A stretch of 64,000 nt of DNA from Chrysemys picta bellii (GCF_011386835.1 NC_088800.1:620001-684000); one strand, 5' to 3'; shown: positions 3,701 to 49,177, numbered from the stretch's first letter. Notes: generated from the sequence alone by a model not told the origin. Made by a program: numbers and translations.

Positions 3701-4170
3701 TCAGCTTGTCTGGACTAGGCCTTTCCTCATCCTGCACAAAGCTTTTTCATGGACCCGGGTGCTACTGTTGCAATAGGGAAGGTGCAGGAGGGTGCAGTGG
3801 GGAGCATCCAAGAAGGTCTCAGCTAAAGAAGATACAGGCAGATAAAGAAGCAACCTTCAGTTTGAAAGTGTTTGAAGAACCAGTGCCCAGGTACACGCTC
3901 CAGCATCTCAGGTTATGCTTGAACCACCAGTTGTGGCTCTCTGGGACTCAAGTCTGCACCAAGAAGTGCAGTAAGTGCTGCTTGTGAATCACGAGGGCTG
4001 CTTTTCCCTTCCAGTCACTCCTGAGCAGGAAGGGAGCTGTGAAGGAACTGCCATCCTGCTGCTTCACAAAACAAGTTGTCATGGTTACCGGGCCAGTTGT
4101 ACCTCTGTCTCTTTTCTGATCTTGGCGCACCCCTTAAGGCCTCCTGCCTTTACCTCTCCTCAGAGTGCCC

Positions 4171-7989: not shown

Positions 7990-21209
<13,220 letters not shown>

Positions 21210-27500: not shown

Positions 27501-30500
27501 TGCGCCGGAGCATCCATCTGCCTAAGGCTTCGTACCACCAATACTTACCACGCCCAAGGGCCTTCTGCTGGCACCTTGGCAAGACGGGCACTCCAGAGGC
27601 ACTAAGAAGGGCCTGTCCACAGCTCCGTGGGCCTGTTTCCTGGAGCAGAAGAGAGAAGATATCTGGGGCAGCTACCATGGGCCAAGGCAGTGTGTCACCC
27701 AAGAACAGGAGAGGAGATGCCCTGCCAGCACCCAGGCCATGGGGCCGGGCAGGCTGGGGTCAGGGCCTTGGCGTGGGGATGGCATGGAGCACACGAGATG
27801 GGAACAAGGTGTGAACCACCATCTGGCTGTGAAGCTTCTGTGCCTGAAGCCAGCTGTACACACGAGTGCCCTGCAACCCTCCCCTGCTCTGAAACATCCA
27901 GCCCCTTCCCACAGCCAGCCGGGACTTCGGCATTAACCGGGGGCACCAGGGCAGCTCTCTGCCCCTTGGCCCAGGGCTGCACCTGCGCAGGAGCTGCCTG
28001 ACTTGCTGCTGCTCCTCGGCCGTGTAGCCCAGCCAGTCCTCCTGCACCTGCCCAAAGAGCTCCTCCTTCAGACTGTAGCTGCTCTCCCGGGGGTTCAGCT
28101 GCCCCACCTGCGTGGACGAGAGCAGCAGAGTCAGCGAGAGCTCAGGGGGCAGGAGCTGCCGCGCTGCCCCCTCTGCCCACACTCACCTCCTGCAGCATGG
28201 GCAGCAGCTGGGCCCTGTCCTTCAGGCTGATCTGCACCCTGTTCAGCCGCTCCAGGAGCTCGTGTTTGCAGTGGGGCCGCAGGGCCAGAAGCTGCACTAG
28301 GCATTTCACAAGAACGCTGCGATCTGTCCCCATGGGGCTACGTTTCCTGCCCCCGGGAGCAAGGCTCCCAGTGGGGCACTTCCTCAGTGGGGTGCTCATG
28401 CCCAGCTTCTTCGGGATGGCGACACATTTGCCTGCAGAGGAATCAATGCACAAACGGCTGCTAATAAAGCACTAACCCCCCCAGATGTGCCCCGAAGGCC
28501 TCTCATCCCGGATCTCACAGCGAGCACCAGACTCCTCTCTGCCCGCCCATAGCTGGCCCCCTTGACGCAAGAGCCTTCTCCTCTGCAACCCCTGGGTCCC
28601 TCCACTTCGTTGGGAGTTTGGGCTAAATTCTGCCAAGCTGAGGCCTGGCACATTTGCTGCAGCCAATGCGCAGCTCAGGGGGACTGGGCAGGGGTTGTGG
28701 AGGTGAGACGACACCCAGGGAGAGGCTGGGCTCACCCGGTAGCTGTTGCAGCCCCAGTTCAGCCCCCAGCTTCTTCCTGAATCCAGCCTTGCCAACCCCG
28801 CCCAGCAGGCCCGGTGCAGCCAGCAGGCCTGGTGCAGGCTGATTCCCAGGGCCCCGCACCTTGGGCTGCGCGAGGTGTGGGACGGAGAGACTTGGCCATG
28901 GGAGCCCAGCTCTGCTCACTCGCCCTCCAGGCAGGAGCTGTAGTGAGCCTCACCCACCCATGTGCGGCACAGAGCCAGCTGCCAACACTCACACGGGCCA
29001 CATGCTGCCCCGTGCCCAGGCGCAGAGTGGGAGGGGCTGCTCGGCCCTCTCAGTGCTTCCTCCCACTTCTCAAGGTCAGCCCCACTCGTGAGCCACGCCC
29101 TGACCGGGGCAGGATCCTGCCTTACCATGGCCTGGGGCTGCTGGCTTGATCTCGATAGCAGCTCTGCTCCACGCCTCCTTCTCCGCCTGGGACACACGCG
29201 CCCGCGTCAGCTGGTACGAGTCGTCGGTGGCACAGACGGTGATTTTCTCCTGGATGCTGCCCACACAGTCCAGCTGGCTCTGGCCCAGCCTGAGAGCACA
29301 GAAACCCGTGTCACTGGCCTGGCCCTGCTCTCTGCTCGCCAAGGAGAGGGGCCTAGACACACCCCCAGACCGGGGGGCACTTGCTACCACACAGCAGGGG
29401 CCAGAGCCAGTGATGTGCCCTTGTCTTGTCTCATCCCCAACCCCTGCCCAACACGGCACTCCCCAGGGCAGCCTCCTGCTGTGGTGGAGTGGAGATTTTC
29501 TGTCACATTTTGTATGACTAGTTTGCGTGCCTCAGTTTCTCCTACATGCTGCATTGCTAGCGAGGTGGTGGGAAAAGGTTGTTTATCTGCAGGGGGGCTT
29601 TGGCACAGGTGTGAATGGCACCAGGCTAGCACCTCATCAATAGAGTCCATGAAGACAACAGCAAATCCAGTCACCAGGACTTCGATACCTAACGACTAAG
29701 GACCATGGATGGCTCCACCTCTCTGCTGGAAGCCAAGCCGAGTTTGCCCAGTTGGAGAAGAAAGGGCTGGGGGATGGAGGGTTGAGGTGGAAGTGAAGTG
29801 TGGGCTGTGGGAAGCAGTCAGGGCTCGCCTGACCTGGGACAAAGACGGGTCAGAGGGATGGGACTTTAGGCTCCATGCTGACAGGACGGACCGTGCTGTA
29901 ACTGTCTGTTTTCTGAGCTACCGAAGGCCTCCCTGTGCTGTGTGCCAGCCGACCATAAACCAACTTTCTCAGCACTGGGTGAGTACCCCTGCAGATGCTG
30001 GTGGGGCTGCATTGCTCCCTGAGATAGCACAGGTCTCCCTCAGGGGTCTGCTTCCCACCATGGCTCCGGTCAGCGAGAGCGGCTGACAGGCCAGAGATGC
30101 AGCCTAAGGAGGCGATGACGCTGCGTGGCTTGCCCTGGAGGAAGAGTGAGACCCCTCGGGGGTCCGTCTCCCTGAACAGCCCTCCCAGAGACTGTTCCAA
30201 AGCTGGGGTCACAGCACCGGTTCGGCGAGGGTGTCTCCTGCGCATTCTGGAATGGAAGCGCCTTCTCCGCAGATGCCCCGCAGGGGAGTCAGCAGGGATG
30301 TGGGGCTGCCCCTCCCACAGGCCAGTAGGTCTCAGAGCCCTGCTGCCTGCCTTCCTACCTCTTTGGCAGGCTTCGGTTGGTGAGGCTGACGGGACCTCCC
30401 CACCTTAGGGGCACTGGGCTGGCCGGTGGCTCTGAAGTGGAACCAAGGACTCCTCCCTGACCCTGAACGAACTGCAACCGCCCCCAGAGCAGGGCAGCAC

Positions 30501-33500
30501 CGCCCCCCCCCCAAGTTAGCACAGATCGGTGGGAAGAGTTAGGGGACTGGGCTGCTTGAGACTGCAGCAGCTCTCACCAAGCAACTCACGCAGCCTGCTC
30601 CCTCCACGCTGAGGCAACTCCCAGCCACCTCCCGCCCTGCTGAACAGCCCGAGGGTGTCAGTCACCCTTCACTCGGCACTGTTCTCTGCTCAGGAGCAGC
30701 TGCTCCAATGCCCGTGTGGGGAGAGCAGCCCCCTCCTGGTCGCTGCTACCCCCCTCCGCTATCCTGAAGGAGATGTTCTTCGGAGGGTGGGGGCTGCACA
30801 GGCAGGGAGCTCCCGGCACATGGTGCGCCAGTGGATCTGGGGCTGCAGCTCCATACAGAACTGTCACTGGACACCATGGCCAGGCGGGTGCATCTGCAAA
30901 GAGCCAGCCCCCTCCCTGACACCAGAACAGACACAGCCCCTTCCCCACGGCTTGTGCCCCATCTCCAGCCGCCTCACACACGCTGCCTTGGACTCAGGTG
31001 CTGGCCATGCCCTTACTCAGCCAGGTCAGCTTCCCACAAGCCCTCGGCCCTGCCCCCAGCCACAGGCTGGGCAGAGGCCAGGAATCTGGTTACCTGCCTA
31101 GGGCTTCAGGCCAGGAAACAAGCCTCCAGTTCTGGGAAGTCTCCAGGACAGGGCCTCTGGGGCACAGACCGGCCCCACTCACTCACCTGGAGACGTATTG
31201 CCGGATGCAGTCGAAGCTGGCCTGCGGCTTGTCCTTGCTGTAGCGGGACAGGTAGAAGGTGAAGAGACGAGCTCCTTCCGCAGGGCTGCCCAGGGCACAG
31301 GGGATCTTGATGTACTGTCCAGGAGAGAGGGAGCGCATGGGACCATTCCCAGGGGAGTGGGGCACTGAGAAGAGGGGAGCTGCATTGTCCCTGCCCCTCT
31401 GCATCCTCCTCCCGCCCCACATCCCCATCCCTGCCTGGGACTTGGCAGCTGTCCTCAGGCTCAGCTGCACACGCCCCAGCTCTCCCAGGGAGGGGGATTG
31501 GGGGCTCCCCAGACCCCCTGTGTACAGACAAAGGGCCCCAGCAGCACTGCCATCTAATTGTCTGGTTCAGGATCCCCCCACGAGGCTACAGCCTGCTTTT
31601 AGCAGCAGCTCTCCAGGGGGCAGATCACCAGCAGAGATTTAACCCTTACAACGCTGGGCCGTTTCCCGACATGGGGGAGCCAATGGGAGACTTGGAGTGG
31701 CTTTACTCCCAGCAGTGGGGTACACAGCCGGGGGGCTGGGGCTGGGTCTCTTAGTGGAGGGACAGAAGGGGGATCAGCAGAAGGGAGGGCTGGCATTCTG
31801 GGCAGGGGACAGTTGGCCAAGCCAGGGGCTCTCTGCCCCAGCTCAGGTGGGGGTGGGTACATGGGGCAGGCACCCCCAGACATACCCTTGGGGCGGGCGC
31901 TCTGCCCCAGCTCAGGCAGAGGGGGGACACATGGGGGGATCCAGCGCTTTACCTATTCTCATTCCAGCTGCCTCTGCTGAGCTCACAGCCCAACCCCTGC
32001 CCCCGGCCCCCCTGCGAGGGGACTGTGAAGGTGGCTGCAGGCAAAGGCCAGAGGGACCCTTCTCTGAGCTCCAGGCAGCAGCTCCCCGCAGGAATCCCCT
32101 GCAGAGCTCGTTAGCGAGCCTGGCGCAGCTGAGATGCTGCAGCAGCCTGGAGCCAAAGGGGAGGGAGGCAAATCTCTGACCCCAGAGCCCCCAGAAACCA
32201 GCAGAGAAGAGACACAGCCAGGCCCAGCACAGGGCAGGCAGCCTACAGGGCCCTGAGCTGCCAAGGCCACAGGTTGCAGGAGCACAATCACTCCGCTCCA
32301 TCCCCCTTGGGGCTGCCGAGAGCCGGTCAGGCCCGAACAGGCCGTGACACCCCCCAGGCCGTGTCGTGGGCCCCTCCCCTGGCTACAGATCAAAAGGGCC
32401 CCTCACCCCCGCAGCCTAGCTGCTCCCCAGCCTCCGCGGGGCCCTGTCTGTCGAGCAGCCCCAGCCCCACGGTCCTGGGAGGAGGCTCACAGGTGATGGA
32501 GGTGGGGAAATCCCCTGGGTCCCATCTACAGCTTCTGCTGCCGGGGCTGGGGAAAAATCCCGCCCGCAGTGGCACGGCTGTGTCCTGTCCCAAGCAATGG
32601 AGCTCCCACCTGCCCAGGTCCCGCCGGCTCACACCGCACCTCCCCCAGAGCAGGGCTATGCTGTGCTCCCCCTGCCCCGTCAGCATGGCTCAGCTCCCAG
32701 CCCCCTCGCCTCCGGCTCAGCTGTAGGCAAGGAAGGAGAGTGAGGAGGAACAAGTGCTGCCCTCGCCCAAGCCCAGTCCAAGGGGTCGCGAGGGAGGGGC
32801 TGCTCCAAGGTCGCTGCCAATGGCGCTGGGCTGCGGGTGTGGGGACAGGCCCAGAACATGGCTGGGGTTGGCAGACCCAGGCTGGAAATGGGAGTGGAGA
32901 CAGGGCTGTTGAAAGCCAGCGGGGCTGGGCTGGGCTGGCGTCCGTCTCACACGCACTCAGTGTGTTCGAGGAGCCCAGTGGCCCCATCCTCACCCCCCAA
33001 ACAGGGAGTCTCGCGCTCCCCAGGGAGCCCCGCCCCACTCACCCCCTGGCTCCCTTGGAAGGCGATGACAGGCTGGGCTGAGCCCTGCAAACAGAACAAG
33101 AGGGACAGTTAGCGGCTGCACCCGTCCAGACCCCTGTGACTCAGGCGCCCCCACACAGCCGGGTGGCGCTACCCCGAGCCCAGCACCTTGCTCCTGGGGA
33201 GCGGGGAGCCCCCCACCCCACCCCACATGGGGCTGCCCTGGCTGAACTGCAGCAGAGCTTCTGGGCCAGGACCGGTCTAGGAGGGGGTGGCTGGGAAGAG
33301 GGCACTGACCCAGTCCCGGGGGGAGTTGGGGGGCAGAGCCCGGGGGAGGGGGGCGCAGGGGGCACTGACCCAGGCCCGGCCTGGGGTGAGGAGGAATACT
33401 GACCCGGTCCTGGGCCAGGGGGAGCTGGATGAGTGCCTGGTGGGGGATACGGGGGGCGCTGACCCGGGCGGGAAGTGGGGGTGGCCCGGGGGGAAGGTGG

Positions 33501-33869
33501 GGGGACACAGGGGGCGTTGACCCGGGCCCAGGGGGAAGGTGGGGGGACACGGGGGGCGCTGACCCGGGCCCGGGGGGGAGGTGGGGGGACACGGGGGGCG
33601 CTGACCCGGGCCCGGGGGGGGAAATGAGGGGACACTGGGGGCGCTGACCCGGGCCGGGGGGGGGGGAAATGAGGGGACACGGGGGTCGCTGACCCGGGCC
33701 CGGGGGGCGCTGATCCGGGCCCGCCCGGACGCACCTGCAGCCGCTGACAGTCCCGCAGCGCCCGCAGCGCCGGGTCGGTGAGTTTCAGGTGCAGGAGGCT
33801 GAGGCGGGGCCCGCGGGAGCCGCCCCGGTACCGGAGCCGCCCAGACAGCTCCGCCCGCGGCCACGGCAT
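24504..33869 (-). CDS. ELL3: RNA polymerase II elongation factor ELL3, 527 aa. Exons 33869-33735, 33084-33043, 31314-31187, 29289-29126, 28431-28187, 28107-27983, 27639-27549, 26507-26237, 25453-25396, 24971-24800, 24725-24681, 24611-24504
   Basis: ELL N-terminal motifs ([33 protein letters not shown]) and occludin/ELL C-terminal domain (YAEYRRLH...[19 protein letters not shown]). All introns GT-AG, phases close, CDS 1584 nt. Assigned to ELL3 by position between PDIA3 and SERF2. Confidence 0.92.
29480..30235 (+). mobile_element. Solo LTR, same family as 4171-5063
   Basis: Shared blocks such as GTGCCTCAGTTTC, CCCCTGCAGATGCTGGTGGGGCTGCATTGCTCCCT and GCTTGCCCTGGAGGAAGAGTGAGACCC. Ends approximate. 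Confidence 0.7.
33300..33722. repeat. GC-rich minisatellite in ELL3 intron 1 (about 10 imperfect units, mostly about 40-45 bp)
   Basis: Recurring GGGGGCGCTGACCCGGGCCCGGGGGG core. Confidence 0.85.
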
Positions 33870-34450
33870 GGCTGGGAGTGGGGCCGGGCCGAGCCGGGTC
33901 GGGCTGCAGGAGCCCCCAGCGCTCGGCTCACAGAGGAGCGGGGCGGGGCCATGGCGGGGCGGGGCGGGGCTGGTTTGGACCGGGAGTGGCCTGGCCGGGC
34001 CGGGCGGGGTCAGGATGGGCGGGGCCATGGCTCGGGCGGGGGCGGGGCCTAGCGGAGAGGGGCGGGGCCATTGCTGGGCGGGGGCGGGGCAATCGCCCGC
34101 CGGGGCTATTTTTGCGGCAGCCCGAGCCAATCTCCTAATCGCATTAGCAGCGTCCCGCACTGTGCAATCCCGGCCCGCTGCCCCCCCCCGGGCCGCCCCC
34201 TGCCGCGGCCCCTGGGCATTGACGGCCCCGAGGGGCTGGGCCAGGATCGGGCCCCGGGCACACAGCAGGAGCCCGCCCGGCGGGTGGGGTGCCGGGCTCT
34301 GGGCCGGTGTCCGCGCCCCGCACCTGGGCACCCTGCGGCCGAGCCCGGCTCCCCCCGTGCAGAGGCTCAGCGAGGGGCAGCTCCCGGGAGCCCTGGCCAG
34401 GCAGATCCGGGCTTAGCGCAGCCAGGCCCTGGGATGCGGGGGGCTTATGC
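33720..34450. promoter_or_regulatory. CpG island, divergent promoter of ELL3 and the FKBP8-like gene
   Basis: Many GGGGCGGGG boxes and a CCAAT at about 34128, between divergent ATGs at 33869 (-) and 34661 (+). Confidence 0.75.
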
Positions 34451-34660
34451 TAATCAGCCTGGCAAAGGCCGTGATGGCATTAGAGCCGGGGCAGGGCAGT
34501 CGCTGCCCAGACACCCCAGCTGCAGCCTCTCCTGGTCGCTGGCTGGGAAGAGCCCCTGGGAGAGCTGGGCTGTGAGTCTGCCGGGGCTGGCCTGGGACTT
34601 GCGGGGGTGCCTGTGGGAGACCACCCCTCTCCCGGGGCCAGAGCCCAGGAGCCTCTGGAG

Positions 34661-37600
34661 ATGTCGCAGGTGGGGAAGGAGGAAGCAGAGGAGAGCCGGC
34701 GTGCCAACCAGCCAGCATCAGCTGAGCCAGCAGCGAGCCAGGCAGCCCAGGAGCTGGCGGGGAGCCCTTGTCTGGGGAGGGTGGTCAAGTTCCTCCTGCC
34801 CCATACTACAGTTGAGGCCCCCCTGCCCCAGGAGGAGGAGCAACAATTCTACCAGGGGCTGGAGCGCCTGCTGGGGCCAAAGCTAGGCCGCTTCGGGGAG
34901 CTGTTCGCGGCCGCTGGCTGGGCAGATGTCACAGGTGAGTCAGCAGGACAGGGGGAGGGAAGGTGGGAAGGGGTGACTGGAAAACAAGACCCCAGAGCCA
35001 CTTTTACGGAAGCTCCCATCTGCCCCCCATCCTCTCTGCTGCACAACCCCTGAGTTACTCTTGAGAGCAAGGCCGAGAGCTGACGGGCTCCCGGAGCACC
35101 CACCCTGGCATTGTCACTACCACATTTCGCTTGGCTGGCCCCCGGCTGGCACTGGATTGCAGTGCGGCATGGGGGCACGGCCCTGCTGGATGGTGGGTCT
35201 CTGGCTGGCCAGCTGTGCCTGGCACAGTGCCATGTGACTAGCCAGCCTGGGGCAGCATGGACTGGATGAGCCTTCTGTGGGGTGCACAGACCCCAAGTGT
35301 TGAGCATGGGGCATCTCTGACCCCTTCAGGGCTGTTGAGTGGCACGCTGGGCAGAGGGGGTGGGGCCCTGAACTCCAGCAGCTGAGCTTCAATGGCCCTG
35401 GCCGGTTTCTAGGCCACAGAATTGCTGCCAAGAGAAACGTGCCTGTAAAACAGTGCAGGCTGGTGGGCAGGGCAAGGGTCTGGGACTCGGGAGAACTGGG
35501 TTCTAGTCCTGGCTGAGCCGCTGGGTGACCTTGGGCAAGTTGCTTCCTCACAGACTGGCTCTGCCTGCTGTAAACAGACTCTGGGGCAGGGCCCATCGCG
35601 CCTGTGCCTGGGCAGCGCCCGGCCCTGCGGGGCACCGATCTCGATGCTACCGTAATACACCTAATAAAGCAGAGCTGCCCTTAGGGAGGTGCAGTCACCT
35701 CCTTGAGGTTCCCCCTCGCTGACCAATGCCGCAGAGCCAAGAGCGGAAGCACTAAAACAAGGGGTCTAATATGAAGGAGGGATAGCTCAGTGGTTTGAGC
35801 ATTGGCCTGCTAAACCCAGGGTTGTGAGTTCAATGCTTGAAGGGGCCACTTAAGGATCTGGGGCAAAATCAGTACTTGGCCCTGCTAGTGAAGGCAGGGG
35901 GCTGGATTTGATGACCTTTCAGGGTCCCTTCCAGTTCCATGAGATAGGTATATCTCCTCATATTCAAGGAGCCCCTTGAGGGGAGGGAGAGCGAGGAATG
36001 CCCCGGCTGGAGAGGGAAGAACGGGTCCCTCTCTGCCCAGGGGAGTCCCACAGGTCCTGTGGCAGGGGCTCCTGTTCCCCTGGACTGATTCCCCTCTCCC
36101 TGTTTGCTTCCCCAAGAGGACCGATTCCTGAGGAAGTTGTTGGTGAGAGAAGGCCAAGGAGAGGCCAGCAGACCCCAGCCAGGCCAGGAGGTGACTGTGA
36201 AGCTGCTGGGAGTCCTGGAGGATGGAAGCCTGGTGGAGAAGGACCCGAAGCTGACTTTCATCCTGGAGCAGGGGGACGTCATACAGGTCTGGTCTCCTCC
36301 TGCACCCTAAGGACAGAGTCACCATCGAGGCTGGATGGTTTGGTGCCCCTGGAGGTTGGCATTTGCCAGTTTTTAAATGCCTGACTCCAGCCATAGGCAT
36401 CAGTGTCCATGTTCTTCTGATCCCATCTTGCTGTTGCAAAGAAATAGACTGTGTAAAACGTACTCAACACACTTGTGCTCCCCCTGCCAGCTGTGCAAGG
36501 GAGTAACAAAACCCCTTCCTGGCTGTGCTGGCCCCTTACAGAGCTGGGGCATAAACAGGGAGGCAAATAAACTCCTGGCGGTAATTCCCAGCTCCTGGGT
36601 TCAGCCCATGGGAAGGGCTGACTGGCTGGAAAGCTGCCCAGGGGGCCAGTCCAGCCAATGAGAATCACAGATCCACAGGGTACCAAGGGACCATCTGCAA
36701 GAGTCATCCAGTCTAACCCCCTACCAAGTGCAGGATTTGTTGTCTAAAAATCCTTCCTGGGCCCTTCCAGTCCCTGAGCTCAGCGCGCCCACAGGCGGGT
36801 AACCCAGGCATTTATGGTGCATGCCTAAGTGTCAACTGAAGTAGCAGCCAACTGCAGGCTCTAGAATCCTATTCAAACGCGCACACAGCTGCGATGGTAG
36901 TAACTGAACCTGGGAAGGAGGGAGCGAGAGGGCTGTGGGGTTGCACAGGATCCAGCCTCACACAATGGCTTGCAGGCCCTACCAAGGCCCTGTTCTTGTG
37001 ATCACTTGCTAAAAGTGACCGAAGGGATGAAAATGGAGCCAGACCCTGCCCCACCTAGATGCAAGATGTACTGGGCTGCCCAGAGGGGATGTGCACTTTG
37101 GGGTGGCTCTTGCTTCCTACCAGCAGCCCCTTGGTAAATGTGAGAGCCACAAGGCAAAGTCAGAGCTGAGGAAGAGACAGACAAAAGCCCAACAGCTGCT
37201 CCTCGGGGTGCCTCTGGGCTCCCCGGATTGGGAGTCCCCCTCAGCGACAAGGACTGACTGCCTTTTGGGGTTTGCTGCAGAGCCAAGCACGTTACTGGTG
37301 TATAACACATGCCATGTATAACAAGGGGAGGGCTGACTCATCTGCCCCCCAGGCCAGGTTAATGCCATGGGTTCCCGGTCACAGTTTGGGGTGCAATTCA
37401 GACTAGTCCGAGGTTCTCTCCTCACTTGTCCTGTAACCCTGAGGGCCTTAAAACACTCTACTGCTGTAGCTGCCTGTCTGGACTCTCCCAGCCAGCAGAC
37501 AAGCCCGCACAGTCCGGGCTCAGCAACTCTGACTCCAGCAGCTGGTTTGTTACACCCCAGCCACACTCAGGTCTCCACCAGCCTTGGTGACTGTTCACCA

Positions 37601-40600
37601 AGTGACCCCACCACACCCCAGTCCCGAATTTCCCCCAAACCGTCTGCCCTGAAGCGTCCAGCCCTCTCCTGGAACGTTCAGAGGAGTAGTAAGCTCCATT
37701 GCTCCTTTAAAGAGACAAAAACACAACTCCAGTTAAGGCAACAAGCTGCTAACGATTACTTCAAACCCAGCTCAGGGCTGGTTTAGATTAAAAGTAAAGT
37801 ACGTTTATTAACAAAAGAGAGAGGTTTTATGTGAGTTCAAGTACAAGGGATAAAGCCAAAGGGATTACAAGCAGATTCAAGTCAAATACATTTTCTGGTG
37901 GCCTAGACTTAACTCAACCAGCTCCAGCCTTGGGTCAAGGTAGATTTCTTACTAATCTTTTTCTTTCCAGCCATGGCCAACTGTCCCTCAGTCACCATCC
38001 ACAGAAGTACAAGGGGCGGTTTCCCTTGGCTTCCTAGGTGAAAGACCCTTGCCGAGGCAGTTTTTTCACCTATATTCAGTTCCTCGAGACTCCAATCCCC
38101 TTGGCTGAAGGACCCGTCTTTCTCAGCTTGCAGAGTGCTAGCCCCTTGTGTCTGGCCAGTGAGGGATGCCAAGATGGCTTCTTTTCTCTCCCCAAACTCA
38201 CTGTTTTGTCCCCAGACTCAGATGACCCCAGGCTGGTCTTCCCTGCTGTGTACTTCCTATCCCATTGAGCTGTATGTAACTGGGGCTTCCATTGGTTTTG
38301 GTCACACCTTGTTTGACGTCATTGGGAGACAGCCTGTTTTCCCTTTGTTTGGTCACAGACTATAAAGCAGAATATCTGTGAGCATCCACAGTTCCTCATA
38401 CAGTGTTAATAGAGATACCTTACAAAGATGGTAATCACCAGGGTGTCATCAGCTTTCATACTCGATACACGTGTATAGCACTAATATTGTACACAATCCA
38501 CTGACTCAACTACTTACGGCCTGGCTGTAGAGTCCCGTAAACCACTGACGTGCATTCTCAGATAAGATGTCATGCTGTTTCCTTCCCTGCCCACTGGTGA
38601 TAGTTGCCTTCTTACCTCCTCCCCTTGGTAGCCAGATGGCTCTATTGACCTTAGATTATAAATGCACCTTCATTCTCCCTGCCTGACGCCAAGGCTGGTC
38701 AGCCAAGCAAATACATTGCAGTGTCTAGGGCAGACTAGGCCTGTGTGCATGGCTGAGAACACAAGTCTAGCACATACGTAACTGTTCGTACACCCCCAGG
38801 ACAGACATCACACAAGGATATTAATGAGCAGTGAGCTATTCATTTCCCAGTGATAGCTCACATGCCACCTTTGGGGATATACATGACAAGCAAGTGAGGT
38901 GTAGGGACAAGTGTTGCTGCCAGACCCCCCAGGGGCCGCTGGCTTACACCCTGCTTGCACACCTATTCTGCGGCACTGCTGCTCCCGCCCCCCATGCTGC
39001 TTGTGGCTCAGCCAACACCTCGAAGCCTGTGAGGACAGCTACAGAAAATGATTCTTGCCAAGAAGCCCCTCTGGGTCCGGCTAGAATCTACATCCCTTGG
39101 GGCAAGGTGGGGGCAGGGGAAGTCGATGAGACTTCCCATCTCATCCTGACCCCAGGGTTCCTCAGAGGAGAGAGACTCCCAGTTTCACATCTCTGCCCAG
39201 AGGTGAGTCCCCAGTCAGGGGGAAGAGAACCCCACATCCATCCCACGCCCTGCTATTGGTGCAGGGCCCAGCAGCTCAGCTGCAATTCAGAACCTGATCT
39301 GACCCTTCCACCCTTCTCTACCACACCCCCTCACGGTTCCACCCACGTATCCGCAGCAGGAAGGGAACAGATGCCACAAGAATGGGGCCCTGTGGGGCAG
39401 ATTCCTCCCCTGACTCTGGCATGCAACGGAGAGGAGTAGAGACCCCAGAACGCCCAGCACCAGGAGCCAGTCACCTCCCTCCAAGCCAGGAGGCAGATGG
39501 TGGAACTCAGCATAGGCACTGCTGAGCTCTAACTTCTCTGCAGCATGCCATGTCAAACACGCTGGGCCAAGGGGAGCCTCCATGCAGTGCAATGGGTGCA
39601 TGCCTTGGGGCAGGAATAAACCACTCTACTCTGACCCCCTCTACAGGCTCTGGAGCTCGGTGTCCAGTCCATGCAGCTAGGAGAGGTGTCCTTCCTGCTC
39701 ACCAGCTTCCTGTATGCTTACGGTCACCTGGGCAGGTAGGCTGTGGTTGATCCTCTCCCTGCTCTGGGCTTAGAGCTGCAAGGTGCTGCCCACCCCTCAC
39801 TGTTCCTTTGGCAAAAGGAACAAAGAGTAATCCAGGCGCTGGTTGCCTGGAGGGGTCCTGTCGTCCTGGCCCAGCTGTCCCTAGTAAAATCACAGCTATC
39901 CACACTGTTTGTGATTCCGGGGTTCCAGAAGCCAAGGAGTTCTGCACCCTGACTCCCAGAAGGCAGGAGCCCAGGGAAGGGAGTACTGGGGAAAGGCAAA
40001 AATCTCACTTCCTCCCCCCAGGGACCCTGATATCCCATCGGATGCCTCATTACTGTATGAGGTGACCCTGCTGCAGATCCGGGACAGCCCCGATCCGGGG
40101 CTCCTGCCACCCTCTGCGCGAATCGGCCTCAGCAAGCAGAAGAGGGAGCGAGGGAACTTCCACTTTGAGCGGGAGGAGTACCAGCGGGCCATGCGATCCT
40201 ACCAGCTGGCCCTGGGCATCCTGGACTCACCTGGTGCAGGTAAAATAAGAGGCCACCTGGGCTCGGGGCACATGAGTTGCGTGGAGGGGAAACTGGGGGC
40301 TTCACCCTAAGAGGGTCTGGGATTAGCAGGGAGAGAGTCCGAGATCAGAGGCTGGCACAGGACTGGGGTTGCACGTTCTGAGTGAGCTGCAGAACACACT
40401 TGTCCCAGCTGGCTTTGACCGCCTTGTTGTTGGGCTCATTCCCAGTCCCTCCGAGCCCCGAGGAGGAAGAGGAGCTGCAAGAGCATCAAGTGAAATGTCT
40501 TAATAACTGTGCGGCCGCCCAGCTGAAGCTGCAGCTGTTTGAGGAGGCGTTGGCATCATGCACTGCAGTGCTGCACATCGACCCCAACAACGTGAAGGCT

Positions 40601-43600
40601 CTCTACAGGAAAGGCAAGGTACAGCCCAGCGCCCACGTCAAGGGAACCCAGCAGACGGGCACAGACCCGGAGAGGAGGGAAAAGGCTGGTAGGAGATGGA
40701 GGGGAGGGAGACTAGAAGCATTGGATCTGCAGGTTCCAGGATGAGATCTCACCAGTCAGGCCCTCTTTCTCCAACTGCTCTGAGTCTGGGTTGGAGACCG
40801 TTACACCAGCGGTTCTCAAACCTTTGTACTGGTGACCCCTTTCACAAAGCAAGCCTCTGAATGCAACCCCCCTTATACGTTAACAACACTCCTTTATATT
40901 TAACACTTATAAATGCAGGCGGCGAAGCGGGCCTTGGCGGTGGAGGCTGACAGCTCACGACCGCCTGAGGGGTCACAAACCCCAGTCTGAGCACCCTGCC
41001 TTACCCCAAAGGGACTGTCTGAGAAAGCAAAGAGAGACGGGGGCAGGGGGAGAATGGGCAGCAGGAGAGAAGGAAGAGGAGCCAAGAGGAAAGTACTGGG
41101 AGTTAGTAACCAAACGGCTCTTCCTCTGGGTGTATCTGAGGCTCTCTCCAGTGAGCCCTTCCCCCTTATCACTGCGTCCCATCCCCCATAGCTCTATGCC
41201 TCCTGATCGGTTTCCCTTCTTTTCTTTACCGTCTCCTCTGTCTCCCAGCTGCTGTCAGAACGAGGAGAGGACCAGGAAGCCATGAATACCCTAAAGAGAG
41301 CCCTCCAGCTAGAGCCCACCACAAAGGTAAAGAGCAGAGCCTAATTCCTGAATTATCCACTCTCCCTGGAGCGGGTGGGCAGCGAGGGGCCCTCCCTCCT
41401 GGCTCCAAGGGGAGAGCTCACCGTGCACTGCCAGCAAGCAGCACATTTACAGGGGTAGCCGGTATCCTGCTTATTTCACTCAGGGATCCCAAAGTGCTTT
41501 AGCCAGGTGTTACGGGCCCAGGGGGCAGTGACCTACCCAAGGTCATACAGGTCAGTGGCAGAACAGGAAATAGAGGCCAGGAGCCCTGACTAACCAGGAG
41601 TGAACTCAACCAGATTCCCACTAAAGCTGCTGCCATATAAAAGGTTTGAGAGGCAGGAGGAATGCCAGTTGCAGGACAAAAAGCCCCCTCCCCGTGCTCC
41701 GGAAGGAAGCAAGTGGAGCCCTCCAGGGTTAACGACCTGCTGTCCTCTCTTGGTCTCTTCCAGGCAATCCACGCTGAGCTCTCAAAGCTAGCGAAGCGTC
41801 AGAAAGGGCAGCCGGAACGCCCTGCCCCCACAGGCGTGGACGGCCTGGTGCAGCCAGCAGCACGCCAGAGCGCATGGGTATGTAGGCTTGGCCCAACCAG
41901 GGTGCTGGTGCTGCTCCTGCTCCGGCACAAGAACTCGGCCTCCCCGTTACTGCCCCTGGTCGCAGTTACGCCTGTGTCTGCAGCCAAAGCCTGATCACCT
42001 CAGGCCCTGCCTTGCCCAACCTGCCTGCCTGGCTGTGACTCCTGTCATCCTGGCCCAAGGCCCTGAGTTTTACCAGAGTGATTCATTCCCAGCTGGAAGG
42101 CTCAGGTAGAGGCTATGTCACCTCTTCTTGGGTGGAGACACTTCCCCTGTTGCCCATGAACAGGAGAGCATGGTCTACACACGGGGGGCGCCTGCTGGTT
42201 TGTGTATGTGAGCAGAAAGCTGGCGGGTGGATGCTAGCACTGCGGAAAGGAGCCATGGGGCCTCTTATAATTCCCTATGCTCTCCCCAGGGCAGATGCTG
42301 ATGGTGCAGAACCCAGGTCTTCATTGTTGGGGGACTGGGAGGGAGGTGTGTCTGATCCAGCGGCAAGAGGCCAGGGCCTGGGTAGAGGAACCCAGGACCT
42401 CGCTGCTCCACCAGGTTCCAGCCCAGAGCCCATCAAATGGTAGTTAAAAAATGTGCGGCATACACCTGCTCCCTGGGCCACTTCCTATCCTGGCTTCCTC
42501 TGCTGGTGCCCTCTTACGTTCTCCCTGGAGTCCTCTCAGGTCCCCTCCAGAGGTGTTCCTCTCTCCATCATGGCTCATCGATGCCACCCATCCTCTGCTG
42601 GTGCCCTCTTACGTTCTCCCTGGAGTCCTCTCAGGTCCCCTCCAGAGGGTGTTCCTCTCTCCATCATGGCTCATCGATGCCATCCATCCTCTGCGGTGGC
42701 TTGGCAGCAGGGCCTGGGCCAAACCACCCGGGGCCCAGCAGCTTCTCGTCAGGAGCCTGCAACACACAACTGCCCCCCAGACTGAGCTGAGCTGCCCCCT
42801 TGGAGCTCAGCCTCCACCGAGAGCATGTCCGGCAGGGGCAGCTGGGCAGAACTGTCTGGGCCGAGGGCTGGTCCTTAGCCCTGATCAGTGTGGGGCTTGC
42901 ACACCCCATCGCACCCATTCACTAGGTCCCTGCCTCGCTAGGGCCCATGCAGACACTCCCAGCCCCATCTGGCATTGTGCAGGGATGGGCTGGAAGGCTG
43001 CAGAGACTCACACCTTCTTGTCAACTGCCTGTGATGGGCCGCTCTCTTACCACTTCAGAGGTTATTTTTCCTCCCTTGGTATCCTGCTGTTCATTGATTT
43101 ATCTCACTAGACTGACCTCACACTTGGTAAAGCGACCCCCATCCTTTCATGTCTTTATACCTGCGCCTGTATTTTTCACTCCGTGCATCTGATGAAGTGG
43201 GCTCTAGCCCACGAAAGCTTATGCCCAAATAAATGTTAGTCTCTAAGGTGCCACAAGGACTCCTCCTTGTTTTAACCCAGCAATGGAACCCAGAAACTAA
43301 GACAGGAACAAGCAGCCTGGCTGGCAGTCGGGTTGTGGGGAGGGAGATGAATCAGAGCCTTCCTTGGCCCGCCCCTATCATCTCAAAACTCTTGACACAC
43401 AACAACCATCTTAGCTACACCCTCTCCCTACGAGGCAGGTCAGCATCACTGTCCCTGAATCACAAGTAGCGAGACCACAGCCCATTCAGATGACCTGTGG
43501 AGTCAGAAATGGAAAGAGAACCTCCATCTCCTAGGTACAGGGGCTGCACTCTCCTCCGAAGACAACAGGCTTGGTGAGCCCTGCCCATGGCCAGCCTCAC

Positions 43601-43842
43601 ACGGCCAGGCCCCAGGCTGCCTTGTGGGGTTCTTGCCGTGCAGGGGGCTGTTGTGAAGCTCATTCTCTCCATCTCTCTCTCTCCTCTTGCAGATGGACCC
43701 CAATGGCCCACAGCCATTGAAGGACACTAGCTGAGTTGCCTCCTGTTTTTTCCAGGTCACCCCCTGGAAGCTGCTTTTTGGTGCTGTGGCCGTGGCTCTG
43801 GGCAGCACAGTGACCTCCATCTTCCTGACAACACGGAGCTGA
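34661..43842 (+). CDS. FKBP8 (FKBP38)-like immunophilin: FKBP domain, TPRs and C-terminal tail anchor, about 400 aa. Exons 34661-34934, 36117-36286, 39647-39735, 40022-40239, 40446-40618, 41249-41326, 41764-41877, 43756-43842
   Basis: Spliced product aligns by eye with recalled FKBP8: GQEVTVKL...GDVIQ|ALELGV...YAYG, KRERGNFHF, VKCLNNCAAAQLKL...NNVKALYRKGK, AIHAELSKL, PWKLLFGAVAVALG. All introns GT-AG and in phase; CDS 1203 nt. The ATG is the first in-frame one after a TAG at 34481, so it is less certain. Confidence 0.88.
35778..35960 (+). mobile_element. Tortoise-type PolIII SINE
   Basis: GGGATAGCTCAGTGGTTTGAGCATTGG...GTGAGTTCAATGC head followed by the CR1-like tail GGTCCCTTCCAGTTCCATGAGA. 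Confidence 0.85.
36656..36750 (-). mobile_element. CR1 3'-tail fragment
   Basis: Minus strand reads GGGGTTAGACTGGATGAC...GGTCCCTTGGTACCCTGTGGATCTGTGATTCT. Confidence 0.5.
37432..38930 (-). mobile_element. Long LTR-like element in intron 2 of the FKBP8-like gene
   Basis: Starts TGTAAC, has a minus-strand AATAAA at about 37805, and resembles long retroelement LTRs in composition. Right end and TSD not resolved. Confidence 0.5.
40807..40998. mobile_element. hAT-type MITE
   Basis: CAGCGGTTCTCAAAC ... TGAGCACCCTG with degenerate TSD CGTTACAC / CCTTACCC. Confidence 0.7.
42497..42694. repeat. 95-bp near-perfect tandem duplication
   Basis: CCTCTGCTGGTGCCCTCTTACG... starts at both 42497 and 42592. 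Confidence 0.9.
43020..43272 (+). mobile_element. Penelope-like element end containing a minimal hammerhead ribozyme (43185-43224)
   Basis: GCAT CTGATGA A GTGGG-CTCTAG-CCCAC GAAA GCTT ATGC followed by a tail shared with the copy at 57111. Confidence 0.75.
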
Positions 43843-44035
43843 GACTACCCAAGGACACGAGGGATGCAGGGGGTTTACAGCCCCTCCCACAGCAAAGGGG
43901 GGGCCCAGGGAGGTGTCATCCCATCAACTCCTCCTGTGCGAGTCCTGGGGTGTCCAGCACAGGATGCAGGCCACATTCCCAGTGAAGCCAGGATCACCAG
44001 CTGACAGGACTTTAGCAGTGACCTGTGTGTCTGTA

Positions 44036-47600: not shown

Positions 47601-49177
47601 CTCAGTGCTGACTGAAACGTTGCTTAAAGAGCCTGGGTTTTGTATCCCGGCCCGTTGGAAGCAGCGCCAGCTCCCTCTGCTAGTGGGCTGGCAGCACCGG
47701 TGCCACAGCGCGGTGGGGCTTCTAGGTGCAGCACTTCACGCACCTGCACAAGTTACTGTTCTCTGCACACCTGCTCCAGCGGCTGCTGCCTCGGCTGTTG
47801 AATGAACCGGGCTCTTCAAGGCACACACCCAGCTGCCCCGCCCTGAACAGCCCTTCCCTGGGGCTCCATGGGGACTGCCCGCGTAGAGTGCAGTGCTGCT
47901 GCCCCTTGGATACTGACAAGTTTGTTCTTCAAGACAGGTGGTCAAGTGACCCTTCTCTGAACTGACAGCTGTGCCAGTAACCCAGCCTGAGCGCTGGCAC
48001 CGGGGGACCTCCCAGTAACCTCTCATCTCAGGCTTGTGCTCCTTGCTTCCAGAACTACCTCAGACGGGAGGGCAGCTGGTGTCTGATGGGGCTGGGTCTT
48101 GGGGCCTTATCTCATCCAGGGTGCAGCGAGTCAGTCTTCTGCTGGTGTCATTGCAGGCGGTAACCAGCGTGAACTGGCCCGTCAGAAGCACATGAAGAAG
48201 CAGACTGACTCGGGCAAGGGGAAGCGGCGCGATGACGGCCTGTCGGCGGCTGCCCGGAAGCAGAGGTAACTAACTATCCATGATGAGAGGAAGAGGCAAG
48301 AGGCTGGCTTTGTTCTCTCCCAGGTTCCTGATTGGGGCTGCAGCCCCATGCTCCCTGCAGCAACTCCACCTGCCAGAGCTGCTTCTGGAGGGCTCCTAGG
48401 AAGCAGGGTCTTGGCTCCCTTCTAAGAGAGGTTCATGCTCAAAGGGCCCTGGGCCCCTGCCTGCTGTGTCCGTCCATGGTCTAGCCATGGAAGTACCATC
48501 CTCTGCTGGGAACCAGGGCCAGCATGGGGGGTCACAGTCCAGCATTCTCACCTGCAGTGTGTATAGAGCTGGGCCCTGGGCAGAACATCCTGCCATTCAG
48601 CTTTCTCTGAAATAACAATGAATGAGTGTCCGGCCTCCCCCTTTTCTCATTTCTCCTCCCTCCTGCACTGTCTTCCCTTCTCTGGGATGCTGTCTCTTTC
48701 ATCAGTCAGATTTCTCTGGCATGCTCAGTAACTTGCTCTCCCTGTCCTCCAGCAGCATGTACCCACCACCTGTGTGCCCCAGCAGAGGCCTCATCCCGTG
48801 TTGTTTCTTACTGCTTTGAGAAGACCCTGTTGTATCTCCACCTCCCTCAACTAGTTGTGTCCCGTTCTCCCCCCCACACCCCCAATCCATCCACCCACCC
48901 AAGGTTTCCAAATTCAATTATCCTGAATCTGAAGTTTGGGGGCCCTGGAGCTGCCACTCCTGCTCTGGCCAGTAGCTCCCTCATGTGCTGAAATCCTGCC
49001 TCCAGAAACTACTACTTTTGCTACCAGAAAACCTGAGATGCTTTCCCTGCCCCTCGCAGACACAGCTGCTCTCTCCTGGCCCACCAGCTAACAGGCTCCT
49101 TTTCTCCCAATAGAGACTCTGAGATAATGCAGCAGAAGCAGAAACAGGCCAGTGAGAAGAAGGAGCAACCGAAATAA
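44616..49177 (+). CDS. SERF2: Small EDRK-rich factor 2, 59 aa. Exons 44616-44622, 48157-48265, 49114-49177
   Basis: [59 protein letters not shown]. Characteristic 7-nt first coding exon (ATGACCC|GT); GT-AG introns. Confidence 0.96.
44682..47524. repeat. G-rich VNTR, about 30 copies of a mostly 97-99-bp unit, in SERF2 intron 1
   Basis: Unit approximately GGGGCTGGGCTGCCCAGGGCTGTCTGGGGGGAGTCTAGGGGGGAGGTTTCTGGGGATCAGGGGAGCCCAGGGGGTTATGTGGGGAGCAGGGGGGTGT. Copies counted by hand from the GATC anchor. Confidence 0.97.

What the first reader, a model, noticed from the sequence alone, without database searches (positions are those of the whole stretch)
34661..43842. Intact FKBP8/FKBP38 paralog beside ELL3, a probable ohnolog lost in mammals
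Seen: a complete 8-exon ORF with an FKBP domain, TPRs, the AIHAELSKL helix and a tail anchor, with no disabling lesion. Recalled: human has no such gene between ELL3 and SERF2, but FKBP8 lies next to ELL on 19p13.11. Inference: ELL3 plus this gene is the sister of ELL plus FKBP8 from vertebrate genome duplication, and it may correspond to teleost fkbp16. It could be a second, little-studied membrane-anchored Hsp90/calmodulin-linked co-chaperone or mitophagy adaptor in non-mammals.
Basis: partly seen in the sequence, partly recalled or inferred. Interest (0 to 1): 0.75.

Follow-up and report, generated by a model that had tools for sequence, protein, structure and literature searches.

The report
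Turtle FKBP16, an old FKBP8 paralogue
This is an intact, expressed turtle gene for a membrane-anchored relative of the chaperone helper FKBP8; databases already list it as "FKBP8-like" or "FKBP16", it is very old, mammals lack it, and nobody has studied what it does.

Summary
An 8-exon plus-strand gene at 34661-43842 has GT-AG introns, compatible phases and no stop. It encodes 400 aa: a disordered N-terminus, an FKBP domain, three TPRs, the IHAELSKL helix and a C-terminal membrane helix. One correction: exon 7 ends at 41877.

Spliced RNA contigs from four runs (three species labels) confirm five junctions. dN/dS against Mauremys is 0.31.

The exon translations are 99.2% identical to the annotated Chrysemys picta "FKBP8-like" protein. 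Sharks, coelacanth, bowfin and a loach call the orthologue "FKBP prolyl isomerase 16".

The tree splits FKBP16-type from true FKBP8 at 100/100. Turtles have both genes; mammals appear only under FKBP8. In turtles FKBP8 lies between KXD1 and ELL, and this gene lies between an ELL-family gene and SERF2. The SERF2 adjacency reaches back to chimaera.

All nine Hsp90-clamp residues and the pocket-blocking arginine of FKBP38 are kept. FKBP8's N-terminal LIR (FEVL) is replaced by a different conserved motif, so a mitophagy-receptor role is not implied.

The gene is already annotated but has no literature. The scan holds only a note on this same stretch, none on other DNA.

The parts
33870..34660 (.). 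791-bp stretch between the start codons of the minus-strand ELL-family gene (ATG at 33869) and this gene (ATG at 34661). It is probably a shared divergent promoter.
   Evidence: GC 75.7%, CpG observed/expected 0.58. The head-to-head layout is also seen in Mauremys and Amia. Promoter activity itself was not tested.
34661..34934 (+). Exon 1: start codon and the disordered N-terminal region. It ends in phase 1 at a CAG|GTGAGT donor.
   Evidence: 90 of 91 residues match P0282. AF2 pLDDT is below 50 for residues 1-40. No RNA reads were laid on this exon; the stretch laid began at 37950.
34775..34813 (+). Conserved N-terminal motif GRVVKFLLPHTTV, family pattern [RK]xVxFx[LM]P. It sits where FKBP8 has its LIR, EDFEVLD.
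   Evidence: The five-residue core [RK]xVxF is present in 30 of 30 lineages. The longer pattern is in 96 of 124 FKBP16-type proteins and 0 of 130 FKBP8-type. The binding partner is unknown.
36117..36286 (+). Exon 2: first half of the FKBP domain.
   Evidence: 56 of 56 residues. PDB phmmer finds FKBP38 at E 1.4e-6.
39647..39735 (+). Exon 3: middle of the FKBP domain (ALELGVQSMQLGEVSFLLTSFLYAYGHLG). It ends in phase 2.
   Evidence: The joint 39735/40022 is seen in runs X2, X5 and X10.
40022..40239 (+). Exon 4: end of the FKBP domain, including the Arg that corresponds to FKBP38 Arg184 (codon split across E3/E4), then a linker and TPR1 with the clamp residues R..GN.
   Evidence: Residue mapping to FKBP38 follows PMC5344419.
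40446..40618 (+). Exon 5: acidic linker, TPR2 and the start of TPR3 (KCLNN and NVKALYRKGK clamp residues).
   Evidence: TPR_1 27.8 bits; FKBP8 at E 2e-14; joints on both sides.
41249..41326 (+). Exon 6: second helix of TPR3.
   Evidence: 26 of 26 residues.
41764..41877 (+). Exon 7: the AIHAELSKLAKRQ helix, which is the putative calmodulin site of FKBP38, followed by a disordered linker.
   Evidence: The donor at 41877 is fixed by RNA contigs in X1, X5 and X10. AF2 helix 334-347.
43693..43755 (+). Alternative acceptor 63 nt upstream of exon 8. It brings in an in-frame TGA at 43732-43734 and gives a tail-less isoform ending ...SAWMDPNGPQPLKDTS.
   Evidence: Joint 41877/43693 in run X2. The same end is found in annotated 385-aa isoforms of Chrysemys and Terrapene and a 381-aa isoform of Malaclemys.
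43756..43842 (+). Exon 8: tail anchor VTPWKLLFGAVAVALGSTVTSIFLTTRS plus the TGA stop.
   Evidence: 28 of 28 residues. AF2 helix 376-399. Hydropathy of the tail is at least 1.6.
24507..33869 (-). Neighbouring ELL-family gene. It is ELL3 by position, head to head with this gene.
   Evidence: Pfam ELL and Occludin_ELL on five exon pieces. PDIA3-like exons lie upstream at about 8045-15123. Orthology to mammalian ELL3 was not tested by a tree.
48159..48257 (+). Neighbouring SERF2 exon, downstream on the same strand.
   Evidence: Pfam SERF-like_N 34.1 bits. Best named hits are SERF2 of turtles.

Best explanation
**Identity.** The stretch is the turtle orthologue of the vertebrate gene that databases call FKBP16, or "FKBP8-like".

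**History.**
- It is an ancient paralogue of FKBP8/FKBP38.
- The duplication happened before sharks and bony vertebrates split, and it copied the neighbouring ELL-family gene as well.
- The gene has stayed next to SERF2 ever since.
- Cartilaginous and ray-finned fishes, coelacth-to-bird lineages (coelacanth, amphibians, reptiles, birds) keep it; mammals do not.

**State of the gene.** It is intact, spliced as predicted and under purifying selection.

**How it probably works (inferred).**
- The main 400-aa product is tail-anchored in an organelle membrane, either the mitochondrial outer membrane or the ER as for FKBP38, and faces the cytosol.
- Its TPR domain docks the C-terminal MEEVD of Hsp90 through a fully conserved carboxylate clamp.
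- Its FKBP domain, like that of FKBP38, has a pocket blocked by an arginine, so it is unlikely to be a constitutive prolyl isomerase.
- Its disordered N-terminus presents a conserved short motif, [RK]xVxFxLP, in place of FKBP8's LC3-binding FEVL. The two paralogues therefore probably bring different partners to the same kind of membrane-bound Hsp90 platform.
- Alternative 3' splicing also yields a tail-less, presumably soluble form.
For: **Shown: gene structure and expression**
- Exon structure.
- RNA junctions in four runs, three studies and three species labels.
- 99.2% identity to annotated Chrysemys protein P0282.

**Shown: selection**
- dN/dS 0.31 against Mauremys (Nd 31, Sd 32), Fisher p = 8e-6.
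- Intron divergence 0.079.

**Shown: naming and phylogeny**
- Names and taxon spread.
- True FKBP8 present in turtles.
- The two groups split at 100/100 with a stem length of 1.18, and the topology inside FKBP16 follows the species tree.
- A mite outgroup falls outside FKBP16. A tree that holds FKBP8 together as one group is at least as good (0.22 log-likelihood units better), p-AU 0.49.

**Shown: synteny**
- Mauremys: ELL(-), FKBP16(+), SERF(+).
- Terrapene: KxDL(-), FKBP8(+), ELL(+).
- FKBP16 followed by SERF in Callorhinchus, Xenopus, Columba and Amia.

**Shown: fold**
- AF2 pLDDT 82.4.
- Best structural match is FKBP38-MEEVD, 5MGX, TM 0.89 at 46% identity.

**Inferred from conserved residues**
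- The nine clamp residues named for FKBP38 in PMC5344419 are R225, N229, K273, N276, N277, N305, K307, R311 and K314.
- They map with identical spacing to R219, N223, K267, N270, N271, N299, K301, R305 and K308, which are invariant or nearly invariant.
- Arg184 maps to R178.
- The IHAELSKL helix and the tail anchor are conserved.
- Motif swap: FE[VI][LI] occurs in 112 of 130 FKBP8-type and 0 of 124 FKBP16-type proteins; [RK]xVxFxLP shows the reverse, 0 of 130 and 96 of 124.
Against: - No localisation, binding or activity data exist for any FKBP16. The paper library holds none: all 40 listed of the 42 "fkbp16" papers concern plant FKBP16-x or use the name as a synonym of AIP.
- Membrane targeting, Hsp90 binding and lack of isomerase activity are inferred from conserved residues only.
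- Exons 1 and 2 and their junctions were not covered by the one read-laying run. They rest on splice signals, the length of the contig, and the annotated orthologue.
- The runs are only guessed to be RNA, although contigs lacking GT-AG introns argue for it.
- dN/dS of 0.31 is moderate, and FKBP16 branches are longer than FKBP8 branches. Constraint is therefore weaker than on FKBP8.
- All bird and squamate models lack the tail anchor, so membrane anchoring is not universal in the family.
- The outgroup is a single, very long mite branch (3.56).
- No shark FKBP8 or cyclostome sequence was obtained.
Confidence: 0.88

Rival explanations
1. It works as a second LC3/GABARAP-dependent mitophagy receptor, redundant with FKBP8.
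For: - It has the same architecture and tail anchor as FKBP8.
- An acidic stretch followed by FYQGL (Y-x-x-L) in exon 1 is conserved in tetrapods and could act as a LIR.
- The W-x-D-[IV] motif is shared with FKBP8.
Against: - FKBP8's canonical N-terminal LIR, EDFEVLD, is absent from all 124 FKBP16-type proteins.
- The FYQGL stretch is predicted helical (AF2 helix 58-74) and is not kept in bowfin or teleosts.
- The W-x-D-[IV] motif lies at the edge of the folded FKBP domain, where pLDDT is 80-94.
Confidence: 0.2
2. The FKBP8/FKBP16 pair arose by an old local (segmental) duplication of an ELL-FKBP block, not by the vertebrate whole-genome duplications.
For: - Only one paired neighbour, the ELL family, was shown with tools.
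- The orientation differs. FKBP8 and ELL are in tandem, while FKBP16 and its ELL neighbour are head to head.
- No cyclostome or invertebrate chordate locus was examined.
Against: - The duplication predates the shark/bony-vertebrate split and postdates the arthropod split. That is the window of the two rounds of genome duplication.
- From general knowledge, not tested here: human 19p13.11, 15q and 5q14 share several gene families, including ELL/ELL3/ELL2, MEF2B/A/C, HOMER3/2/1 and CRTC1/3.
Confidence: 0.12
3. It is the FKBP8 orthologue itself, moved to a new place, or a decaying unexpressed copy.
For: Some sources label members of this clade simply "FKBP8", for example Caretta, Alligator and Xenopus laevis.
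Against: - Separate true FKBP8 proteins exist in Terrapene, Gopherus, Pelodiscus, Emydura, Pelusios and Carettochelys.
- Identity to turtle FKBP8 is 39.5%.
- The tree split is 100/100.
- Spliced contigs exist.
- dN/dS is 0.31 with p = 8e-6.
- The ORF is intact in 30 or more lineages.
Confidence: 0.01

Closest known systems
FKBP8 / FKBP38 (human, PDB 5MGX, 2AWG, 3EY6)
   Same: - Same domain order: disordered N-terminus, one FKBP domain, three TPRs, the IHAELSKL helix and a C-terminal tail anchor.
- The fold matches at TM 0.89.
- All nine Hsp90 carboxylate-clamp residues and the pocket-occluding Arg184 equivalent are kept.
- The tail ends with one basic residue in both (TTRS here, AARN in FKBP8).
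   Different: - Only 36-40% identical, and a separate clade.
- Different locus: ELL3/SERF2 rather than KXD1/ELL.
- It lacks the FEVL LIR and the glutamate-rich N-terminus, and carries [RK]xVxFxLP instead.
- It lacks the ETAMYRKMLGN stretch after the IHAELSKL helix.
- It evolves faster.
"FKBP prolyl isomerase 16" / "FKBP8-like" entries of other vertebrates (for example Callorhinchus P0229, Latimeria P0156, Amia P0249, Chrysemys P0282)
   Same: - Same clade.
- Same neighbour, SERF2.
- Same N-terminal motif.
- The window's gene is the orthologue, 99.2% identical to the Chrysemys entry.
   Different: Nothing of substance. Bird and squamate members lack the tail anchor. Salamander members are much longer (675-710 aa).
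FKBP4/FKBP5 (FKBP52/51) and AIP
   Same: FKBP domain plus an Hsp90-binding TPR domain. They are structural matches at E 1e-19 to 1e-14.
   Different: They are soluble with no tail anchor. FKBP52 and FKBP51 have two FKBP domains and an active FK1. Relative domain placement differs (rmsd 7-20 Å).
FKBPL
   Different: It did not appear among the 120 best hits of either full-length search. It was not compared directly here.

Membership tests
FKBP8/FKBP38-type architecture | One FKBP_C domain followed by three TPRs | tested here: met
   Pfam FKBP_C 55.1 bits and TPR_1 54.2 bits on proxy P0282. Weaker hits on single window exons. Foldseek to 5MGX gives TM 0.89.
FKBP8/FKBP38-type architecture | C-terminal transmembrane tail anchor | tested here: met
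   Exon 8 encodes WKLLFGAVAVALGSTVTSIFL followed by TTRS. AF2 helix 376-399. Hydropathy at least 1.6. Actual membrane insertion was not tested.
FKBP8/FKBP38-type architecture | Hsp90 MEEVD carboxylate clamp (R225, N229, K273, N276, N277, N305, K307, R311, K314 of FKBP38) | tested here: met
   All nine residues are present with identical spacing, and are invariant or at least 90% conserved in 50 sequences. Binding itself is not testable here.
FKBP8/FKBP38-type architecture | Canonical N-terminal LIR (FEVL) used for LC3A binding | tested here: not met
   0 of 124 FKBP16-type proteins against 112 of 130 FKBP8-type. The window has GRVVKFLLP at the aligned place.
FKBP8 orthologue group | Groups with FKBP8 of other vertebrates and lies between KXD1 and ELL | tested here: not met
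   It falls on the other side of a 100/100 branch. The true turtle FKBP8 sits at KxDL/ELL, whereas this gene sits at ELL3/SERF2.
FKBP16 orthologue group | Groups with proteins named FKBP prolyl isomerase 16 | tested here: met
   The proxy P0282 nests in a turtle clade inside the FKBP16-type group. Profile score margin is at least 113 bits.
FKBP16 orthologue group | Conserved position immediately upstream of SERF2 | tested here: met
   Window, Mauremys, Callorhinchus, Xenopus, Columba and Amia.
Ohnologue pair from the vertebrate genome duplications | Duplication before the gnathostome radiation and after the split from invertebrates | tested here: met
   Sharks, rays and chimaera sit inside FKBP16. 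The mite outgroup sits outside it, and a tree holding FKBP8 together as one group is not rejected. The outgroup is a single long branch.
Ohnologue pair from the vertebrate genome duplications | Paired paralogous neighbours on both chromosomes; single copy in invertebrate chordates | tested here: inconclusive
   One pair was shown, an ELL-family gene beside each. The wider paralogon rests on recall only. Amphioxus, tunicates and cyclostomes were not examined; the lamprey look-up failed.
PP1-interacting proteins with an RVxF motif | Match to [RK]x0-1[VI]{P}[FW] in a disordered region | tested here: met
   RVVKF at residues 40-44, where pLDDT is about 40-55. This loose pattern occurs by chance in about 25% of proteins (PMC4794898).
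PP1-interacting proteins with an RVxF motif | Match to the stricter [KR][KR]xVx[FW] pattern, and actual PP1 binding | tested here: not met
   The residue two before the x-V is G, S or similar in the lineages inspected by eye. Binding is not testable here.

The most novel reading that the evidence does not exclude
After the duplication, FKBP16 changed partner rather than merely backing up FKBP8.

- Its invariant N-terminal motif, [RK]xVxF-xLPP-xTI, took the place of FKBP8's LC3-binding LIR.
- The motif would recruit a different client to an Hsp90-bound platform on mitochondria or ER. Protein phosphatase 1, via an RVxF-like dock, is the best guess.
- Splicing in turtles, and loss of the tail in birds and squamates, would release the platform into the cytosol.
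- Non-mammalian vertebrates would then have a membrane-tethered Hsp90/phosphatase adaptor with no mammalian counterpart.
Probability: 0.15. Interest if true: 0.6.

Novelty: already known. Interest (0 to 1): 0.33.

Why it matters
**For the scan.** This is a correct reading of an ordinary annotated gene, so it should rank low for novelty.

**For the FKBP8 field.** The result carries a practical caution.
[quoted passage not shown] That holds only for mammals.
- Zebrafish, Xenopus, chicken and reptiles carry a second family member.
- The copy is membrane-anchored in fishes, amphibians, turtles and alligator.
- It keeps the whole Hsp90 clamp but has a different N-terminal partner motif.
- Knock-outs or morphants of fkbp8 in those models may be buffered or confounded by fkbp16.
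- Findings on fkbp16 cannot be carried over to mammals.

**An evolutionary oddity.** In the one bird locus examined (pigeon), FKBP16 is present and no ELL gene was called; mammals keep ELL3 and lack FKBP16.

Tried and rejected
- **Exon 7 donor.** My first model ended exon 7 at 41835 (GGC|GTGGAC). RNA contigs show 41877 instead.
- **Representative search with exon 5.** The list was crowded by unrelated proteins with many TPRs. Only the single-stretch hits belonged to the family.
- **Rooting.**
  - No shark FKBP8, cyclostome or chordate outgroup could be obtained.
  - The only outgroup found was a mite protein on a 3.56-long branch.
  - The free tree placed it among FKBP8 rows without support.
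  - The AU test shows that the simple two-clade tree is at least as good.
- **Lamprey SERF2 locus.** The protein is not on record.
- **Sigmodon SERF2-like locus L007.** It has no SERINC or HYPK beside it, so I did not take it as the syntenic locus and did not use it.
- **Felid locus L008.** The best tblastn match, at 3695-3826 (E 0.11), contains a stop and low-complexity sequence. The profile search gave nothing (best independent E-value 2.3). I treat the match as noise.
- **PP1 idea.** The motif fits only the loose RVxF consensus, not the stricter one, so I downgraded it to a low-probability reading.
- **W-x-D-[IV] as an accessible LIR.** It lies at the edge of the folded FKBP domain, so I did not adopt this reading.
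- **Literature.** "fkbp16" with "zebrafish" gave 0 papers. "FKBP8-like" gave 0 papers. All 40 listed of the 42 "fkbp16" papers concern plant proteins or AIP.
- **Scan notes.** A search by words for FKBP8, ELL and KXD1 found nothing.
- **Window ELL region against the pigeon locus by tblastx.** Only scattered, non-collinear low-complexity matches appeared.
Full report
**What is in the sequence**

On the plus strand between 34661 and 43842, the stop-free frame segments contain pieces that resemble FKBP8 along its whole length. At the DNA level each piece is bounded by canonical splice sites with compatible phases.

| Exon | Coordinates | Note |
|---|---|---|
| E1 | 34661-34934 | ends in phase 1 |
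| E2 | 36117-36286 | |
| E3 | 39647-39735 | ends in phase 2 |
| E4 | 40022-40239 | ends in phase 1 |
| E5 | 40446-40618 | |
| E6 | 41249-41326 | |
| E7 | 41764-41877 | |
| E8 | 43756-43842 | ends with TGA |

The coding sequence is 1203 nt, or 400 codons, with no internal stop. On single exons Pfam gives only borderline hits: FKBP_C 20.1 bits on E2 and TPR_1 27.8 bits on E5. The best solved relatives are human FKBP8/FKBP38, at E 2e-14 for E5 and 1.4e-6 for E2.

**Expression and splicing**

I laid contigs of four small public runs on 37950-43900. Two runs carry the species label of the best DNA holders, and two carry other labels. They come from three studies.

- The contigs skip exactly the predicted introns: 39735/40022, 40239/40446, 40618/41249, 41326/41764 and 41877/43756, all GT..AG.
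- This corrected my first guess for the E7 donor (41835).
- A 1445-nt contig in X10 runs from beyond the stop back through E3, with 468 further bases. That is the length of E2 plus E1 plus 24 nt.
- One run (X2) also shows an alternative acceptor at 43693.
  - It introduces an in-frame TGA and removes the tail anchor.
  - The same ending appears in annotated Chrysemys, Terrapene and Malaclemys isoforms.
- The runs are only guessed to be RNA, but contigs lacking GT-AG introns are hard to explain otherwise.

**Which gene it is**

I searched exon by exon and then used a stored proxy.

- E5 searched against the 1.84-billion representative library returned, among many unrelated TPR proteins, single-stretch hits of 65-93% identity.
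- Cluster look-ups and a word search with the turtle hit showed what these are.
  - They are named "peptidyl-prolyl cis-trans isomerase FKBP8-like" in turtles, crocodilians, birds, squamates and frogs.
  - They are named "FKBP prolyl isomerase 16" in sharks, rays, chimaera, coelacanth, bichir, bowfin and a loach.
- The window's exon pieces match the 400-aa Chrysemys picta isoform X1 (P0282) at 394 of 397 residues, contiguously from 1 to 400. The genome is therefore an emydid turtle close to Chrysemys.
- Identity to turtle FKBP8 (Terrapene, P0316) is 39.5%, and to rat FKBP8 36%.

**Paralogue, not orthologue**

- A search with Anolis FKBP8 found true FKBP8 in six turtle genera as well as in birds, squamates, amphibians, monotreme, marsupials and placentals.
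- A 61-protein maximum-likelihood tree separates 35 FKBP16-type rows from 26 FKBP8 rows by a branch of length 1.18, with support 100/100.
- Mammals occur only on the FKBP8 side.
- With the root on that branch, the FKBP16 side reads cartilaginous fishes, then ray-finned fishes, then coelacanth, then tetrapods. This is the species tree.
- A mite FKBP8-like protein used as outgroup falls outside FKBP16.
  - Its exact place among FKBP8 rows is unsupported.
  - The tree that holds FKBP8 together as one group is 0.22 log-likelihood units better, p-AU 0.49.
- The duplication is therefore older than the shark/bony-vertebrate split and younger than the arthropod split.

**Synteny**

In the window the gene order is:
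- PDIA3-like (+, about 8-15 kb)
- an ELL-family gene (-, 24507-33869)
- this gene (+)
- a 2.85-kb G-rich 99-bp minisatellite
- SERF2 (+, exon at 48159-48257)
- a SERINC gene (-, from about 53.4 kb)

| Species | Locus | Order |
|---|---|---|
| Mauremys | L001 | ELL(-), FKBP16(+), SERF2(+) |
| Amia | L006 | ELL(-), FKBP16(+), SERF(+) |
| Callorhinchus | L003 | FKBP16 then SERF |
| Xenopus | L004 | FKBP16 then SERF |
| Pigeon | L005 | PDIA3-like, FKBP16, SERF2, SERINC; no ELL gene called |
| Terrapene (true FKBP8) | L002 | KXD1(-), FKBP8(+), ELL(+) |

Whether the block was copied by genome duplication or by an old local duplication is not settled here. The wider 19p/15q/5q paralogon rests on my own recall only.

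**Selection**

- Exon-by-exon codon comparison with Mauremys gives Sd 32, Nd 31, dS 0.116, dN 0.036 and dN/dS 0.31.
- Without the disordered exon 1 the ratio is 0.28.
- The excess of synonymous change is significant, p = 8e-6.
- Introns differ by 0.079.
- Of nine exon differences seen in the RNA contigs, six are synonymous.
- FKBP16 branches are longer than FKBP8 branches, with a marked acceleration on the bird stem (0.8).

**Absence from mammals**

- All named proteins of the 144 FKBP16-type set are non-mammalian; a few Logan entries carry no name. Shark members, which are more distant, scored E of about 1e-77, so a mammalian member should have been seen.
- A felid locus with SERF2, SERINC, HYPK and MFAP1 (L008) has no called gene in the 10 kb upstream of SERF2.
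  - tblastn with eleven FKBP16 proteins found nothing there (best E 0.11, a stretch containing a stop).
  - A family profile against the six-frame translation also found nothing (best independent E-value 2.3).
- ELL3 itself was beyond that 10 kb.
- Monotremes and marsupials were not examined at the DNA level.
- No human sequence was fetched or compared, and no contig that I took for human was returned.

**How it probably works**

An AF2 model of the proxy, built with 50 aligned relatives, has mean pLDDT 82.4. Its layout is:
- a disordered N-terminus (residues 1-40)
- a helix at 58-74
- the FKBP domain
- seven TPR-region helices
- the IHAELSKL helix (334-347)
- a disordered linker
- a C-terminal helix (376-399)

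Foldseek's best match is FKBP38 bound to the Hsp90 MEEVD peptide: 5MGX, TM 0.89, rmsd 2.6 Å, 46% identity.

The paper on that structure (PMC5344419) supplies two sets of residues.
- It names the carboxylate-clamp residues R225, N229, K273, N276, N277, N305, K307, R311 and K314. It shows that K307E abolishes Hsp90 binding.
- It attributes the lack of constitutive isomerase activity to Arg184.
- With a constant offset of six, all ten residues are present here. They are invariant or at least 90% conserved across 50 FKBP8 and FKBP16 sequences.
- Where canonical FKBPs have the pocket residues aligned to Tyr in VHYTG and Trp in VIKGW, both paralogues have Leu.
- I infer Hsp90 docking and a non-constitutive FKBP domain. 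Neither is shown.

The tail (WKLLFGAVAVALGSTVTSIFL-TTRS) resembles that of FKBP8.

**Where the two paralogues differ**

- FKBP8 has a canonical LIR near its N-terminus (PMC7849173). In the alignment it is EDFEVLD, present in 112 of 130 FKBP8-type proteins and in none of 124 FKBP16-type proteins.
- At the aligned place FKBP16 has [RK]xVxFx[LM]P[PH]x[TI][IV].
  - It forms an island of conservation in an otherwise fast-changing disordered region.
  - The core is present in all 30 lineages sampled, from sharks to birds.
- The motif fits the loose PP1 RVxF consensus. That consensus occurs by chance in about a quarter of proteins, and the motif does not fit the stricter one (PMC4794898). I record it as unexplained.
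- FKBP16 also lacks FKBP8's ETAMYRKMLGN stretch after the IHAELSKL helix.
- All bird and squamate models lack the tail anchor. The pigeon locus has no such exon before SERF2.

**Novelty**

The gene is annotated in RefSeq and UniProt for this turtle family and named FKBP16 in several other vertebrates. Its existence and orthologue group are therefore already known.

The paper library holds no study of the vertebrate gene. [quoted passage not shown]

The functional suggestion is open, and on the mitophagy side it is weakened.

- Searching or folding the joined spliced product of the window itself.
- Examining the human loci.

Noticed in passing
L005 (Columba livia) 1-21716, compared with window 24507-33869: In the pigeon the order is PDIA3-like, FKBP16, SERF2, SERINC. 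No ELL-family gene is called, and there is no collinear match to the turtle ELL region. The pigeon locus keeps FKBP16 with no ELL3; mammals show the reverse.
   Followed up: partly
window 44684-47535: A G-rich minisatellite with a 99-bp unit, about 29 copies over 2.85 kb and strong GC skew. It lies between the 3' end of this gene and SERF2 and creates long spurious ORFs.
   Followed up: partly
bird and squamate FKBP16 proteins (for example P0186, P0201, P0030, P0195); L005 11716-12187: Every bird and squamate FKBP16 model retrieved ends in a proline-rich tail without the transmembrane helix. The pigeon locus has no tail-anchor exon before SERF2. This suggests loss of membrane anchoring in those lineages.
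   Followed up: partly
window 36254-39058 (intron 2): Contigs of runs X1 and X2 read from exon 2 on into intron 2 for up to 2.8 kb. This is retained intron or pre-mRNA.
   Followed up: no
window 40736-40934 and 43124-43322: Summed contig depth is in the hundreds to thousands in all four runs, with many loose ends. These are interspersed repeats inside introns 5 and 7.
   Followed up: no
window 40096 and 40586: The window has CCG (Pro) at 40096, where all four RNA runs and Chrysemys have CTG (Leu). It has AAC (Asn) at 40586, where three runs and Chrysemys have GAC (Asp). These are individual or species differences in non-clamp positions.
   Followed up: partly
window 43439-43531: An alternative last exon used by annotated Terrapene X1 and Pangshura models (ending ...GVRNGKRTSIS) is intact in the window. 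It has no contig support in the four runs laid.
   Followed up: no
P0198 (Pipra filicauda), P0208 (Anser cygnoides): Some bird gene models named "small EDRK-rich factor 2" are fusions of FKBP16 with SERF2. These are read-through or annotation merges of the two adjacent genes.
   Followed up: no
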